50,355 bases of DNA from Octopus bimaculoides (taxonomy: Eukaryota), in assembly GCF_001194135.2 (NCBI RefSeq), contig NC_069008.1:14562393-14612747 (forward strand). Reading direction: 5' to 3'. The notes beneath the pieces were generated by a model. It was not told the origin of the DNA and did no database searches. It saw only the letters and a list, made by a program, of their open reading frames with translations. Positions 46,012-49,990 of this stretch are shown here, in pieces. The position numbers and the translations under genes are program-made. The number at the start of each line of letters is the position of its first letter. Positions within the stretch are counted from its first letter, which is position 1.

Positions 46012-49000
46012 ATGGAAATGGAAGCTTTTATGTTAAACTCAAACACATCCTCCTCCTCTGCCACAGATGCGCCATTTCTCATAGCTAACAACAAAAACAG
46101 CAAGTTCAGCAATGGAAGTGAAAATAAAAATTACAACTCCTACAACAGATATTTAAATGGTTCTATCACCCCTAACAACAGTAACAGTAATACTCTTGCT
46201 CTTGCAACTTATGAACCTGTTGTTTCTGGTGGTTTTGATTATTCAGCTTCGGTTTCACTTACTAATGATTCCACCACTTTTATTACGAGCAGTAGTGTAA
46301 TAGTATCTAATGAGGATGAATTTGTTATTCCTTTTAGCCTTGCTGAAATCATCTTGATTTCTTTCATTCTGGTAGTTTTGTCATCGACCACAATTGCTGG
46401 TAATATATTTGTAGTTGTAGCTTTCAAAATTGAGAAAAAACTGCGAACAGTCAGCAGTTATTTTTTACTGAGTCTAGCAGTCGCCGATTTTTCGGTTGGA
46501 TTAATATCTATGCCGTTTTATTCTCTGTATGTTCTCTATGGCTACAGTTGGCCGTTCGGATCAGTACTTTGTGATTGCTGGCTCGCCCTGGATTACACAA
46601 TGAGTAACGCATCAGTAGCAAACTTACTAATCATCAGCTTTGACCGTTACTTCTCGGTCACTCGTCCTCTGACCTACAGAGCAAAAAGAACTCCGAAAAG
46701 AGCCGCAATCATGATTGGCTGTGCCTGGGTCATATCAATCCTGCTTTGGTCCCCATGGATTTTCTCATGGCCCTACATTGAAGGGAAACGTACCGTTCCT
46801 TCTAAAGACTGTTATATACAATTCTTAAAAACAAATTCTTTTATCACTGTTATTACTGCATTATTAGCTTTTTATTTACCTGTCTCAATAATGATTTACC
46901 TGTATTATAAGATTTGGAGAGCTACAGAAAACCGACAGAAAGGACTCGTCAATTTGATTGCAGCCAAACACCTAAATGGCAGCAGTAGCAACAGCAGCAG
47001 CAGTAAAAAACACAACATTTCCAGTAGTAAAAAAAACACTATTTCCAGTGAAGAAGATGAAGAAATATCTAGCAACAGTTTTATTAGCTCTAAACAAAAG
47101 AGAAGCAATAACTTTTGTTCATTTTCTTCACCTACTAAAAAAACTGATGGTAGATTCCAGTACAATAATTATAATCACAATAATGATAACGAAGATGAAA
47201 ACCAACATCAACAGCTAGGAAAGAAGACCAAAAACAACAGCAAGTGGAAGAAAAGGCTGCCAAAATGGTTAACAAGTCATCGGAATCTGAATCCGAATCC
47301 TAATCCAAATCGTGTCAAAAAACTGTGCTGCCCGATAATAGATCGTGATGTTGATTATATCGATGACTCTAGCACAAGTGATCCACCAGGATCTCCCCCT
47401 GCCATGAGAGATCAAGAATTATCCCAATTAAAGTTAACACTGAAATCGCCAGCTGTTCTGCCAGCAGATAAAGACAAAGATGGATATTCTTCCCATTTCA
47501 TATCAGTCCCTGATAATATAAACTCAATGATGACCATCACTCCTAAGTCTTCTGATATACAACCAATGAGAAAATCCAGCAGAAGTCTAGATGTCAGTAA
47601 TGTTGATAGAGACCAAGAATTCTCAAGACTGACACTGAAGTCCTTTACCGTTTCTTTGTCGAGTAAAAATGGAGATGATTGTTCTGATTTCACACCATTA
47701 TCAAATAATTTAATAAATACAAGGAATTCAAATATGCTGAAATCTTCTGAGAGACGCCAAAATAAAAGTTCTGGCAGCCAAATGCTTCTTTCACCTCTTA
47801 GTGATACAAATGTCGATTTGAAGGGATATGTCGATGATACTCCTTCTACGAATGAGGAGGACATGACTAGTGGTATGTCAAGTCGGCAGCATAGTAATCT
47901 GTCTGAAGTTACTGCTGCTACTATGGTTGACGAAGGAGGAGAAGAACAACAACAACAACAAAAACAACAGCAACAACAAGAAATGATTTATGATGACCAA
48001 AAAGAGAGATTGATGTACACATCTTTAATTAAATCATCTGATGCTGATAGCAGCAATGATGACAAGAACCTGAACCAACAAAATATTGAAACAGTGAAAG
48101 GAAAAGAAAATAAAGATGATTCTGAAATGGTAGAAAGAATAACAGTAACAAAAGATAAAGTAAAAGCAAAGTTTGATAAAACTAAGGTGAACGCAGGAAC
48201 ATCAAATTGCGAAAGAAAGACTAAAGATGTTACTAATATTGTTGAGAGAGATAACAATAACAAGAAATGGGATGAGGATGATGGCAATGTTTTGTGTAAT
48301 GGCAAAGCTTTTTGTCATGACAGGTTAGAGCGTGGAGCAAAGTTTGCTGAAAATGAACAGAAAGAACAAATGATGAATTTTGAAGCAAACAAAGATGCGG
48401 TGATTAGTATTGATGATGTTGATTGTACTGTAACATATAATAATAACAACAGGGAATGTTATAAACCTAAAGATGATGGTAGTACTTCGTATCATGCTAG
48501 ATCAGGGCTAGAGTTAAAAGCAAAGATGGACAAAACTAAACAAACTGAGGAAATGTGGACTTGTGAAAGAAAATACAATGCAAGTGCTGTTGGTATTGAC
48601 AATGTTGATAGTTCAAAGACTGATAACCATAACATGAAATGTGATGGGTCAGAGTTAAAAGCAAAATGTGGCAGAACTGTGCAGAGAGAAAAGGCAGCAA
48701 ACTTTGAAGCAAAAAACAGAAAATGTGCACCGATTAGTGTTGATAATGTTGATAGTATGAATATGGATAATAATGATGGAAAATGCAGTAAAGAAGAAGG
48801 CAGTAATGATTTGTGTAGCAGCAGATTTGAGGGCAAAGTAAAATTTGTCAAAAGCAAACACAAAGAAGAAACGTCAGATTCAGAAATAAAGGATGAACAA
48901 CAAGAAAAAATGGCGGTGGTGATTAGTTTCGATGATGACTGCGATGGTGTTGAAATAGATAGCAACAATTTAAAATGCAAGAAAAATGGTGGTGATGATG

Positions 49001-49990
49001 ATGATGATGATGATGATGACGACGATGGTGATGATGATGGTAGTGGTGACAACGACGCTGGTGACAATAGTAACAGTCTGTGTTTGGGTAGTGATAAACA
49101 ATGTAAGAGAAACCAGTGTAATTCAAATCATGTTAGATTAAAGCTCGAGAAAGAACCTGGACTGGATGTTGTAGGCTCACTTGAACAGAACAGCTTACTT
49201 ACTCCCTCGCCTTCTTCATCTTCACCACCTACATCACCAGGTGATAAGTTACTGCTTGTACATCAGGGAAGGAAAAATGCAGCCATGACAGATGACAGCG
49301 GTTTGCATTTATGCAATGACAGACAACATGAGAGAAACCACAAAAATTCGTGCCATGTCCACTTAGGGATAGAAATAACCCAAGACGATGTAGACCCAAT
49401 CGAACAAAATAATACCACCTCCTCTCCATGGTCTTCTTCACTACCTTCACCACTTGGATCAATAGATACGCCATTGCTTGACAGTCAGAACACTGGGAAT
49501 AAAGCAATAATGAAAAACCGACAACAGAGAAACCAGGAGCAAAAAGCAACCAAGATGGATGACAGTAGTTTGTGCGATGAAAAAATATACCAAAATAAAA
49601 GCTGGGAAAATTCATGTAATGTTAGGTCAGAGGCAAGGACGAATGCTGATCAACTGATTGAATCAAACCAATTGAACATTATAACTTCTCCATCTTCCTC
49701 TTCTTCTTCCCTTCCCGCCCCCTGTTCAGCAAATATACCACTGCTTGATCGTAGGAAGATTACAGATTCAGAAAGAATCACAACGACACGACAGACTCAC
49801 GTTACCAACAAAGTCTGGAACAAAGCACGTTCACAGCAGGATAAGAAAATGCGATGCCAGGATAAAAAAGCTGCAAAAACCCTAACTGCTATACTCCTGG
49901 TGTTTATCATCACCTGGACGCCTTACAATATCTTTGCAGTTCTGCAAGTGTTCTGTGAAGGTTGTATTAACAACACAGTATATGCTATTG
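46012..49990 (+). CDS. mAChR-A: Muscarinic acetylcholine receptor (class A GPCR, mAChR-A / M1-M3-M5-like), coding exon spanning N-terminus to ECL3; TM7 exon is outside the window
   Basis: ORF track 46012-50046. Motifs by my count: GN131 (1.50), LAVAD159 (2.50), C187/C267 disulfide, D194-Y195 (3.32/3.33), DRY 211-213, W239, LWSP, T279/T282/A283/A286 in TM5, FYLP290, KKAAKTL, TW1302-T-P1304-Y1305-N1306, ECL3 CEGC. Five N-terminal N-x-S/T sequons (N11, N34, N49, N55, N85). Donor attg|GTGAGT at 49990/49991 (phase 1) falls where TM7 G-YWLCY should start. Confidence 0.95.

What the first reader, a model, noticed from the sequence alone, without database searches (positions are those of the whole stretch)
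46918..49866. Muscarinic receptor with a ~980-aa third intracellular loop in one open exon
Seen: P5.50 (P290) and P6.50 (P1304) are 1014 residues apart with no stop codon and no internal N gap. Established: vertebrate mAChR ICL3s are roughly 150-240 aa and insect mAChR-A roughly 400 aa (recalled, to be verified). The AAKTL motif at TM6 matches the Gq-type M1/M3/M5 AAxTL pattern rather than the M2/M4 VTRTI pattern. Inference: a 2.9-kb AT-rich frame kept open suggests translation and selection. The loop could be a lineage-specific disordered scaffold or phosphorylation platform for GRK/arrestin regulation.
Basis: partly seen in the sequence, partly recalled or inferred. Interest (0 to 1): 0.8.

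Follow-up and report, generated by a model that had tools for sequence, protein, structure and literature searches.

The report
Octopus muscarinic receptor with giant loop
This is the main coding exon of the Octopus bimaculoides A-type (M1/M3/M5-like) muscarinic acetylcholine receptor, and its cytoplasmic third loop really is about 983 residues long: three times that of the squid and cuttlefish orthologues, grown by internal tandem duplications, and still under purifying selection.

Summary
One open frame (46012-50046, +) holds TM1-TM6 of a muscarinic receptor. P5.50 is P290 and P6.50 is P1304, 1014 residues apart, with no stop and no N. Residues 1-1327 are identical to O. bimaculoides XP_052833537.1 (1412 aa), which RefSeq misnames 'probable WRKY transcription factor protein 1'. 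The exon ends at a GT donor (49991); TM7 lies outside the window.

The loop is coding. It has 0 stops against about 72 expected. Against O. vulgaris, dN/dS is 0.30 (p = 7e-10), differences fall mostly on third codon positions, and all four indels are in frame.

It is lineage-specific. The decapodiform orthologues (Acanthosepion pharaonis CHRM3 and an unnamed contig) have ICL3s of 299-306 aa. The median P5.50-P6.50 distance of 240 relatives is 349. About 65% of the octopus loop consists of three old internal repeat families (2, 5 and 3 copies) lying in octopus-only insertions.

The loop looks disordered: no Pfam or PDB match and low hydropathy. Gq-type coupling is inferred by homology only, and the loop's function is untested.

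Long loops (P5.50-P6.50 distance 740-930) also arose independently in mites, a horsehair worm and a cephalopod paralogue. This is therefore the longest case found here of a known tendency, not a new kind of system.

The parts
46012..49990 (+). Large coding exon of the A-type mAChR gene, from the ATG to the splice donor (residues 1-1326 plus 1 nt, phase 1)
   Evidence: The ORF is listed. Residues 1-1327 are identical to P0109 = XP_052833537.1. An in-frame stop lies 9 nt upstream of the ATG.
46012..46326 (+). Extracellular N-terminus (aa 1-105), rich in N, S and T
   Evidence: Translation. This part lies before the start of the PDB alignments at about aa 108-110.
46327..46917 (+). TM1-TM5 core (aa 106-302), including D3.32/Y3.33 (LALDY), the DRY motif, the ECL2 Cys, T5.39/T5.42 and P5.50 (46879-46881)
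   Evidence: Pfam 7tm_1 E = 1e-59. Alignment to M5 and M3. There are 0 amino-acid differences in 197 residues against O. vulgaris.
46918..49866 (+). Third intracellular loop, aa 303-1285 (983 aa)
   Evidence: The loop has no stop, no Pfam or PDB match and no TM-like segment. Mean hydropathy is 0.368, below the 0.421 disorder boundary. It holds 179 Ser/Thr residues and has net charge -21.
47242..47358 (+). Loop motif shared with the decapodiform orthologues (KWxKxL ... KxCC..D..DY). In octopus it is split by an NPNPNP insertion
   Evidence: Alignment A3 and BLASTP of the loops (E = 3e-7 for the N-terminal part of the loop).
47407..47772 (+). Repeat family A, 2 copies (aa 466-522 and 533-587; RDQE[LF]S.L.LTLKS...)
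   Evidence: Self-BLASTP gives 38% identity, E = 1e-3. The decapodiform loops lack this segment.
48148..49011 (+). Repeat family B, 5 copies of about 47-61 aa (aa about 713-1000; xLKAKxDKTK..NFEAK..ISxDNVD..DNNxxKC)
   Evidence: alignment A1. DNA remnants D3, D6 and D7 appear. Only the last unit has a counterpart in the decapodiform loops (E = 1e-3).
48986..49041 (+). GAT/GAC triplet run encoding the poly-Asp tract
   Evidence: TRF and family D1. One of the in-frame indels against O. vulgaris lies here.
49039..49797 (+). Repeat family C, 3 copies of about 75-89 aa (aa about 1010-1262; DDSxLxLCxD..NSCHV..IEQN..SPSSSSLPxP..PLLD)
   Evidence: (alignment A2, 13 invariant columns) and family D2.
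49867..49990 (+). KKAAKTL junction, TM6 (W6.48, P6.50 at 49921-49923, Y6.51, N6.52) and the start of ECL3
   Evidence: Second aligned stretch to M5 and M3. There are 0 amino-acid differences against O. vulgaris.
49991..49996 (+). Splice donor gtgagt. In O. vulgaris the next exon (TM7 and C-terminus) lies about 7.5 kb downstream, beyond the end of this window
48916..49939 (+). Cryptic internal intron (GT...tttgcag, 1024 nt, frame-shifting), the counterpart of the one used by the O. vulgaris alternative model P0110
   Evidence: The alternative 5' exon of that model (44868-44942) carries an in-frame TAG in O. bimaculoides.

Best explanation
**Shown**
- The window carries the large coding exon of the Octopus bimaculoides orthologue of the invertebrate A-type muscarinic receptor (Drosophila mAChR-A/DM1, vertebrate M1/M3/M5 type).
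- Its ICL3 is a genuine protein-coding segment of about 983 residues.
- The segment was expanded about threefold in the octopod lineage. This happened after the split from decapodiforms and before the O. bimaculoides / O. vulgaris split.
- The expansion came mainly from tandem duplication of loop segments (families A x2, B x5, C x3, about 65% of the loop), plus low-complexity runs (poly-D, poly-Q, NP, poly-S).
- The membrane-proximal ends and a KW..CC..DY motif are shared with the squid and cuttlefish orthologues.

**Inferred**
- The receptor binds acetylcholine and couples to Gq/11 through the conserved ends of ICL3, which extend TM5 and TM6 as helices (about aa 288-320 and 1262-1307).
- The central 940 or so residues are an intrinsically disordered tether. 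It probably gates access to the G-protein cavity.
- It probably also offers many Ser/Thr phosphorylation sites, including an acidic SSEEDEE cluster, and repeated short motifs for arrestin or scaffold binding. Repeats would make such binding multivalent.
- The moderate constraint (dN/dS about 0.3, against 0 in the TM core) fits a motif-bearing disordered region.
For: - **Identity:** 100% match to P0109 over aa 1-1327. The O. vulgaris orthologue P0001 (1410 aa) keeps the loop, with a P5.50-P6.50 distance of 1012.
- **Family:** the PDB ranking puts M5, M3 and M1 ahead of M4 and M2. Pfam 7tm_1 matches. KAAK-TL is shared with all A-type hits. Drosophila mAChR-A signals via Gq (PMC6641838).
- **Coding:** 0 stops against 72 expected. 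In the loop, dS = 0.10 and dN = 0.030; 53.5 of 123 changes are synonymous against 19.5% expected, p = 6.7e-10. Differences by codon position are 33/25/65, chi-square p = 1.8e-5. The four indels are 1, 6, 3 and 2 codons long. P(no stop among 123 changes, if neutral) = 0.0025. The exon is 95.4% identical with 4 gaps in 4 kb, whereas flanking non-coding DNA is 86-92% identical with many gaps.
- **Orthology and lineage specificity:** core identity is 77.6% and 76.6% to the decapodiform P0111 and P0250, against 68% to Aplysia and 60% to P0058. ICL3 is 983 aa against 299 and 306 aa. All have the same intron position after YAIG.
- **Rank among relatives:** in 240 relatives the median P5.50-P6.50 distance is 349 and the 95th percentile is 600; the two octopus proteins are the maximum.
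- **No loop homologues elsewhere:** an exhaustive phmmer search and a loop-only search find the loop only in the Octopus cluster.
- **Repeats:** 12 non-self hits at E <= 1e-4, against a mean of 0.03-0.1 (maximum 1) in shuffles. Unit alignments are A1 and A2. DNA remnants appear.
- **Disorder:**
- **Roles of ICL3 in other receptors:** its N- and C-terminal ends are needed for G-protein coupling (PMC8668892). Loops longer than about 45 aa gate G-protein selectivity (PMC10033409). CK2 phosphorylates an acidic Ser cluster (the SASSDEED motif) in the M3 ICL3 (PMC2064117, abstract listed).
Against: - No transcript or peptide data could be examined here.
- The O. vulgaris model is not fully independent, because that annotation used the O. 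bimaculoides proteome as evidence (PMC10700109).
- One O. vulgaris alternative model (P0110) splices out the last third of the loop together with part of TM6.
- Only two closely related Octopus species carry the loop in the databases searched, so selection rests on a single pairwise comparison (dS = 0.10).
- Segment aa 591-712 shows no significant constraint (pN/pS 0.71).
- CK2-type and basophilic kinase motifs are not enriched over shuffles; only [ST]P is (15 against 6.5 +/- 2.2).
- The AF2 run used a single sequence, so its low confidence is weak evidence for disorder.
- G-protein coupling and every proposed loop function are inferred by homology, not tested.
Confidence: 0.7

Rival explanations
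1. The expansion is translated but essentially functionless. The centre of a muscarinic ICL3 tolerates insertions, so replication slippage and unequal crossing-over inflated it. The residual constraint would only reflect the need to stay in frame, soluble and non-toxic.
For: - ICL3 length is hypervariable in this family: 139 to 1014 in 240 relatives, with independent expansions to 740-930 in mites, Gordionus and the paralogue P0058.
- The loop has no detectable homologue outside Octopus.
- The repeat copies have drifted to 25-43% identity.
- Segment 591-712 is near neutral.
- The loop contains low-complexity runs.
Against: - dN/dS is 0.13-0.43 and significantly below 1 in four of five sub-regions, including repeat families B and C.
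- Conserved positions persist between old repeat copies, for example 13 invariant columns in family C.
- No copy-number change occurred between the two species, although the sequence is repeat-rich.
Confidence: 0.25
2. Much of the open frame is removed from the mature mRNA (an exitron or internal intron), so the real receptor has an ordinary-sized loop.
For: The O. vulgaris alternative model P0110 uses a donor in the loop and an acceptor inside TM6. Alternative forms in that annotation came from PASA transcript assemblies.
Against: - That intron is 1021 nt in O. vulgaris and 1024 nt in O. bimaculoides. It shifts the frame and destroys TM6.
- Its alternative 5' exon has an in-frame stop in O. 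bimaculoides.
- The same model runs unspliced through about 680 residues from TM5 into the loop.
- All loop sub-regions except 591-712 show coding-type substitution patterns and only in-frame indels.
- The main models of both species keep the loop.
Confidence: 0.08
3. The long frame is an assembly or annotation artefact.
For: The window comes from a gapped draft with 19 N runs. The gene's RefSeq name is plainly wrong.
Against: There is no N inside the ORF. An independent chromosome-level O. vulgaris assembly has the same collinear exon at 95.4% identity.
Confidence: 0.01

Closest known systems
Drosophila melanogaster mAChR-A (DM1; P0039, ACM1_DROME)
   Same: It is the same A-type clade, with 64% identity over the TM1-5 core. 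It has the KAAKTL junction and a long, non-conserved ICL3. It is experimentally Gq-coupled (PMC6641838).
   Different: Its P5.50-P6.50 distance is 452, against 1014 here. The loop sequences are not alignable.
Acanthosepion (Sepia) pharaonis 'CHRM3' (P0250, 687 aa) and the unnamed decapodiform contig protein P0111
   Same: Both are orthologues, with 77-78% core identity. They share the intron position after YAIG, the ICL3 ends, the KW..CC..DY motif and one B-like unit.
   Different: Their ICL3 is 299-306 aa and lacks repeat families A and C. It has only one B-like unit.
Human M3 and M5 muscarinic receptors
   Same: They are the best structural-database matches (E about 1e-82). The orthosteric residues, the DRY motif and the AAxTL junction are shared. 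The M3 ICL3 is a known disordered region phosphorylated by CK2 (PMC2064117, abstract listed).
   Different: Vertebrate M3-type proteins in this sample have P5.50-P6.50 distances of about 250. The octopus loop is about four times longer and repeat-built.
Other independently expanded mAChR loops: astigmatid mites (Dermatophagoides, Sarcoptes; P0074, P0079, P0084), Gordionus (P0072), and the cephalopod paralogue P0058
   Same: They are A-type-like receptors with P5.50-P6.50 distances of 738-932. The 900-aa loop of P0058 also contains internal repeats.
   Different: The loop sequences are unrelated to the octopus one, and all are shorter.

Membership tests
Class A (rhodopsin-like) GPCR | 7TM fold with the DRY motif, the TM3-ECL2 cysteine pair, CWxP/TWTP in TM6 and NPxxY in TM7 | tested here: met
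   Pfam 7tm_1 E = 1e-59. FDRYFS, the C of LCDCW, the ECL2 Cys of KDCYIQF and ITWTPYN are all in the window. NPFCY of TM7 is present only in the full protein P0109, encoded outside the window.
Muscarinic acetylcholine receptor | Orthosteric site residues D3.32, Y3.33, T5.39, T5.42, A5.46, W6.48, Y6.51, N6.52, Y7.39, C7.42 and Y7.43 | tested here: met
   LALDY, ITVITALLAFYLP and TWTPYN align residue for residue with M5 and M3. YWLCYLNSTINP is in P0109. The PDB ranking puts all five mAChR subtypes (1e-72 to 1e-82) well above the next family, histamine H3 (1e-42).
A-type / M1-M3-M5-type (Gq-coupled) mAChR | Closer to M1/M3/M5 and DM1 than to M2/M4 or the B-type, with the AAxTL junction at the ICL3-TM6 border | tested here: met
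   M5, M3 and M1 score 1e-82 to 1e-79, against 1e-75 to 1e-73 for M4 and M2. KKAAKTL matches the A-type hits, while M2/M4-like hits have KVTR/KVTK and B-type hits have KAFR. Named best hits are 'DM1-like', 'M3', 'M5-like' and 'M1-like'.
A-type / M1-M3-M5-type (Gq-coupled) mAChR | Activation by acetylcholine or muscarine, block by atropine, and a Gq/PLC/Ca2+ response | not testable with these tools
   This needs heterologous expression and pharmacology.
GPCRs whose signalling is gated by a long disordered ICL3 (Sadler et al. 2023) | ICL3 longer than about 45 aa and intrinsically disordered | tested here: met
   The loop is 983 aa, has hydropathy below the disorder boundary, has no domain match and gets low AF2 confidence. 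The threshold comes from PMC10033409.
GPCRs whose signalling is gated by a long disordered ICL3 (Sadler et al. 2023) | Removing the loop increases promiscuous G-protein coupling | not testable with these tools
   This needs full-length versus loop-deleted signalling assays.

The most novel reading that the evidence does not exclude
The octopod-specific repeat modules (B x5, C x3) could be multivalent docking units. They would turn this muscarinic receptor into a lineage-specific synaptic signalling hub, recruiting several copies of a kinase, arrestin or scaffold partner, or driving condensate formation. That would be a cephalopod-specific innovation in cholinergic neuromodulation rather than a tolerated spacer.
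Probability: 0.12. Interest if true: 0.6.

Novelty: new variant of a known kind. Interest (0 to 1): 0.35.

Why it matters
- **Length record in this sample:** this is the longest ICL3 among the 240 muscarinic-type relatives recovered here, at about three times the squid and cuttlefish orthologues.
- **How disordered regions grow:** it gives a datable example of a disordered GPCR region growing by serial tandem duplication of pre-existing loop segments while staying under purifying selection.
- **A natural test case:** octopus and decapodiform orthologues have nearly identical cores (77-78%) but loops of 983 and about 300 residues. That offers a natural experiment on what ICL3 length and repeated motifs do to G-protein selectivity and desensitisation.
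- **Annotation fix:** it exposes a RefSeq misnomer ('probable WRKY transcription factor protein 1') that hides a core neurotransmitter receptor of a neuroscience model animal.

It is not a new kind of system. ICL3 hypervariability in muscarinic receptors is well known, and the protein model is already public.

Tried and rejected
- **Loop-only homologue search and exhaustive phmmer search.** Nothing outside the Octopus cluster matches the loop, so no wider octopod sample could be assembled. The first full-length search returned only proteins of 730 aa or more, apparently a length filter. That biased the first loop-length survey, and searches corrected it.
- **Pfam on the loop and PDB sequence search on its central 937 aa.** Neither found a match.
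- **AF2 on aa 285-1310 as a single sequence.** Only the TM5 and TM6 helices and their extensions were confident, and mean pLDDT was 35.7. I did not run a fold search on such a model.
- **TRF.** It found only short triplet or 24-nt arrays, so the long-period repeats had to be found at the protein level. A whole-loop self-BLASTP printed nothing; overlapping 60-aa pieces worked.
- **Kinase-motif enrichment.** CK2 and basophilic motifs are not above shuffles, so I do not claim a specific kinase platform.
- **Literature searches.** Searches for the accession numbers and for cephalopod muscarinic receptors found no paper on this gene.
- **TE insertion.** The loop DNA hits only microsatellite-like GAT runs elsewhere, so I rejected a TE insertion as its source.
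- **P0110 as the real isoform.** I considered this and rejected it.
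Full report
**1. The observation**

The window has a single very long open frame, 46012..50046 on the + strand, 1344 codons. 'FYLPVSIM' puts P5.50 at residue 290 and 'ITWTPYN' puts P6.50 at residue 1304. They are 1014 residues apart, and none of the window's 19 N runs falls in the ORF. The finding's span 46918-49866 is residues 303-1285, which is 983 aa.

The loop frame has no stop codon. The other five frames of the same 2949 nt have 61, 162, 51, 15 and 44 stops. Composition-matched shuffles average 72 stops, giving P(0) of about 5e-32. 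The next longest open frame in the whole window is 238 codons.

One correction is needed. The exon ends at 49990 (...GCT ATT G|gtgagt). The remaining 17 codons of the ORF are intron. TM7 and the C-terminus are encoded about 7.5 kb downstream in O. vulgaris, beyond the end of this window.

**2. What it is**

Residues 1-1327 are identical to P0109, which is O. bimaculoides XP_052833537.1 / XP_014787289.1 / UniProt A0A0L8FSJ2 (1412 aa). RefSeq names it 'probable WRKY transcription factor protein 1'. That name is a misnomer, presumably drawn from the low-complexity loop. The O. vulgaris orthologue P0001 (1410 aa) is named 'muscarinic acetylcholine receptor DM1-like'.

- Pfam finds 7tm_1 in two pieces.
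- Against all PDB sequences the best matches are M5, M3 and M1 (1e-82 to 1e-79), then M4 and M2 (1e-75 to 1e-73). Histamine H3 follows only at 1e-42.
- The alignments show D3.32/Y3.33 (LALDY), the DRY motif, the TM3-ECL2 cysteines, T5.39/T5.42/A5.46, and W6.48/Y6.51/N6.52. P0109 supplies Y7.39/C7.42/Y7.43 and NPxxY.
- The KKAAKTL junction is shared by essentially all A-type hits. M2/M4-like hits have KVTR/KVTK and B-type hits have KAFR.

By homology the receptor is therefore an A-type, M1/M3/M5-like muscarinic receptor. Drosophila mAChR-A is Gq-coupled in cells (PMC6641838). Coupling of the octopus protein itself is inferred, not tested.

**3. Is the loop really coding?**

I fetched the O. vulgaris locus (L001) and aligned the exon codon by codon.

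- The TM1-5 core and TM6 have no amino-acid change, with dS about 0.12 in the core.
- The loop has 67 amino-acid differences in 976 aligned codons, with dS = 0.100, dN = 0.030 and dN/dS = 0.30.
- Of 123 nucleotide changes, 53.5 are synonymous, where 19.5% would be expected (binomial p = 6.7e-10).
- Changes by codon position are 33, 25 and 65 (chi-square p = 1.8e-5).
- The four indels are 1, 6, 3 and 2 codons long.
- 4.8% of possible point changes in the loop would create a stop. Under neutrality, P(no stop among 123 changes) is 0.0025.
- At the DNA level the exon is 95.4% identical with 4 gaps in 4 kb. The 2 kb upstream is 90-92% identical with 3-7 gap openings per aligned block of 0.7-1.3 kb, and the intron downstream is 86% identical.

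By sub-region, pN/pS is as follows:

| Loop sub-region | pN/pS | Significance |
|---|---|---|
| aa 303-465 | 0.13 | p = 4.7e-5 |
| Repeat A | 0.24 | p = 0.004 |
| aa 591-712 | 0.71 | not significant |
| Repeat B | 0.32 | p = 0.001 |
| Repeat C | 0.43 | p = 0.017 |

The loop therefore evolves as coding sequence under moderate purifying selection, except for one near-neutral poly-Q/acidic stretch.

Three caveats apply.

- This is a single pairwise comparison.
- The O. vulgaris annotation used the O. bimaculoides proteome as evidence (PMC10700109), so the two gene models are not fully independent. The two genome sequences are independent.
- No transcript or peptide data were accessible.

An alternative O. 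vulgaris model, P0110 (736 aa), runs unspliced from TM5 through about 680 residues, most of them loop. It then uses a GT in the loop and a 'tttgcag' acceptor inside TM6. In the window the equivalent intron is 48916-49939, 1024 nt long. It shifts the frame and destroys TM6. The model's alternative 5' exon has an in-frame TAG in O. bimaculoides. I read P0110 as a minor or aberrant transcript, not the receptor.

**4. Is it lineage-specific?**

The first full-length search returned only proteins of 730 aa or more, apparently because of a length filter. I therefore added two further searches:

- an exhaustive phmmer search of 1.84 billion representative sequences with aa 127-1326;
- a search with the best non-octopus hit, P0111.

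Only the Octopus cluster matches through the loop.

P0111 is an ORF on an ENA metagenome-assembly contig (L003). It stops at YAIG|K, so it has the same intron position. It is 75% identical over its full length to 'CHRM3 [Acanthosepion pharaonis]' (P0250, 687 aa), so it comes from a decapodiform cephalopod.

| Protein | Identity to the octopus TM core |
|---|---|
| P0111 (decapodiform contig) | 77.6% |
| P0250 (Acanthosepion pharaonis) | 76.6% |
| Aplysia | 68% |
| Drosophila DM1 | 64% |
| P0058 | 60% |

P0111 and P0250 are thus the orthologues. Measured between the same borders, their ICL3 is 299 and 306 aa, against 983 aa in octopus.

Across 240 relatives with both anchor prolines, the P5.50-P6.50 distance has median 349, interquartile range 316-402 and 95th percentile 600. 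The two octopus proteins are the maximum, at 1014 and 1012. Next come P0058 (932), astigmatid mites (743-777) and the nematomorph Gordionus (738).

Gastropods here span 353-647. However, very long loops have arisen several times independently. This includes P0058, a divergent paralogue in the same ENA sample as P0111, and so presumably the same decapodiform genome.

**5. How the loop grew**

Self-comparison in overlapping 60-aa pieces finds 12 non-self matches at E <= 1e-4. Global or local shuffles give a mean of 0.03-0.1 and a maximum of 1. The matches resolve into three families:

- **A:** 2 copies, aa 466-522 and 533-587.
- **B:** 5 copies of about 47-61 aa between about aa 713 and 1000 (alignment A1).
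- **C:** 3 copies of about 75-89 aa between about aa 1010 and 1262, with 13 invariant columns (alignment A2).

Short DNA remnants of the B and C units are still visible, but TRF sees no long-period array. Copies are only 25-43% identical, so the duplications are old. Both Octopus species have the same units, so the duplications predate their split.

In the four-way alignment (A3), octopus and the decapodiforms share only four things:

- the N-terminal ICL3 segment;
- a KWxKxL...KxCC..D..DY motif, interrupted in octopus by an NPNPNP insertion;
- one B-like unit (E = 1e-3);
- the C-terminal RQT...QQ.K...KKAAK segment.

Families A and C and four of the five B units lie in octopus-only insertions. 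About 640 of the 983 residues are repeat-derived. Triplet-repeat runs (poly-D, poly-Q, poly-S) add more.

The 900-aa loop of P0058 also contains internal repeats: 6 hits at E <= 1e-4, against 0 in shuffles. Tandem duplication therefore seems to be a recurrent way of enlarging this loop.

**6. What the loop is like and how it probably works**

The composition is dominated by S (125), D (103), N (96), K (96) and E (59). Net charge is -21, and there are 179 Ser/Thr residues. Mean normalised hydropathy is 0.368, below the charge-hydropathy boundary of 0.421, and there is no TM-like segment. There is no Pfam family and no PDB sequence match.

Single-sequence AF2 gives confident helices only for TM5 with its extension (aa 288-320) and for aa 1262-1307, running into TM6. 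The rest is coil at pLDDT of about 30. That is weak evidence, because no alignment was available.

The following is inference from established work on related receptors:

- The conserved ICL3 ends mediate G-protein coupling (PMC8668892).
- A long disordered centre can sit over the G-protein cavity and sharpen selectivity (PMC10033409).
- It can also carry phosphorylation sites for desensitisation. The octopus SSEEDEE cluster (aa about 345-351) resembles the CK2-phosphorylated SASSDEED motif of M3 (PMC2064117, abstract listed).

The repeats would make any motif-based binding multivalent. Kinase-motif counts are not above shuffle expectation, except [ST]P (15 against 6.5 +/- 2.2), so I do not claim a specific kinase.

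The main rival is that the expansion is a tolerated spacer with only generic constraint. The significant dN/dS below 1 in the repeat families argues against pure neutrality but cannot exclude this.

**7. Comparison with what is known, novelty and verdict**

The receptor passes every testable membership criterion for class A GPCR, for mAChR, and for the A-type/M1-type. Pharmacology is untestable here.

It differs from Drosophila DM1, vertebrate M3 and its own squid and cuttlefish orthologues only in the size and repeat architecture of ICL3. The protein model is already public, and I found no paper discussing it.

I rate it a new variant of a known kind: real, lineage-specific and mechanistically explicable in origin. 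It is the longest case found here of a known tendency, and its function is unproven. Interest is 0.35.

Noticed in passing
window 46012-49990 (protein P0109): RefSeq calls this O. bimaculoides protein 'probable WRKY transcription factor protein 1' (XP_052833537.1 / XP_014787289.1), although it is plainly a muscarinic receptor. The name presumably comes from the low-complexity loop.
   Followed up: yes
L002 10001-13549 (P0058); L003 8904-10733 (P0111): The same ENA assembly (ERZ21867824) holds two mAChR-A-like single-exon ORFs of a decapodiform cephalopod. One is the true orthologue, with a 299-aa loop. The other is a divergent paralogue (60% core identity) with its own 900-aa loop that also contains internal repeats (CLK[LV]R...QNL..KEFE). 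I could not determine whether Octopus has this paralogue.
   Followed up: partly
window 50101-50307 (and L001 about 70929-71627): A minisatellite of 24-nt units (with 48- and 72-nt super-periods; consensus CCATGTAAAAGCAC...TGCAG) lies in the intron just after the donor. It is present, and apparently longer, in O. vulgaris.
   Followed up: partly
window 44868-44942 and 48916-49939: The O. vulgaris alternative model P0110 uses an upstream alternative exon and a frame-shifting cryptic intron that runs from the loop into TM6. The alternative exon has an in-frame TAG in O. bimaculoides.
   Followed up: yes
window 3419-3634; 37940-38563; 28115-29190 and 38001-39080: Transposon debris lies in the region upstream of the ATG, which in O. 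vulgaris falls within the annotated gene span. There is a mariner-type transposase fragment (Pfam Transposase_1, E = 2e-16). There is also a reverse-transcriptase/PHD fragment whose DNA recurs at several places in the O. vulgaris locus.
   Followed up: partly
proteins P0074, P0079, P0084 (Dermatophagoides, Sarcoptes), P0072 (Gordionus): A-type muscarinic receptors of astigmatid mites and a horsehair worm also have very long loops (P5.50-P6.50 distance 738-777). These arose independently of the octopus expansion.
   Followed up: partly
window, whole: The window has 19 N runs (4691 N in total), most flanked by (TA)n or (TATG)-like microsatellites, typical of a gapped short-read draft. None touches the receptor exon.
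   Followed up: yes
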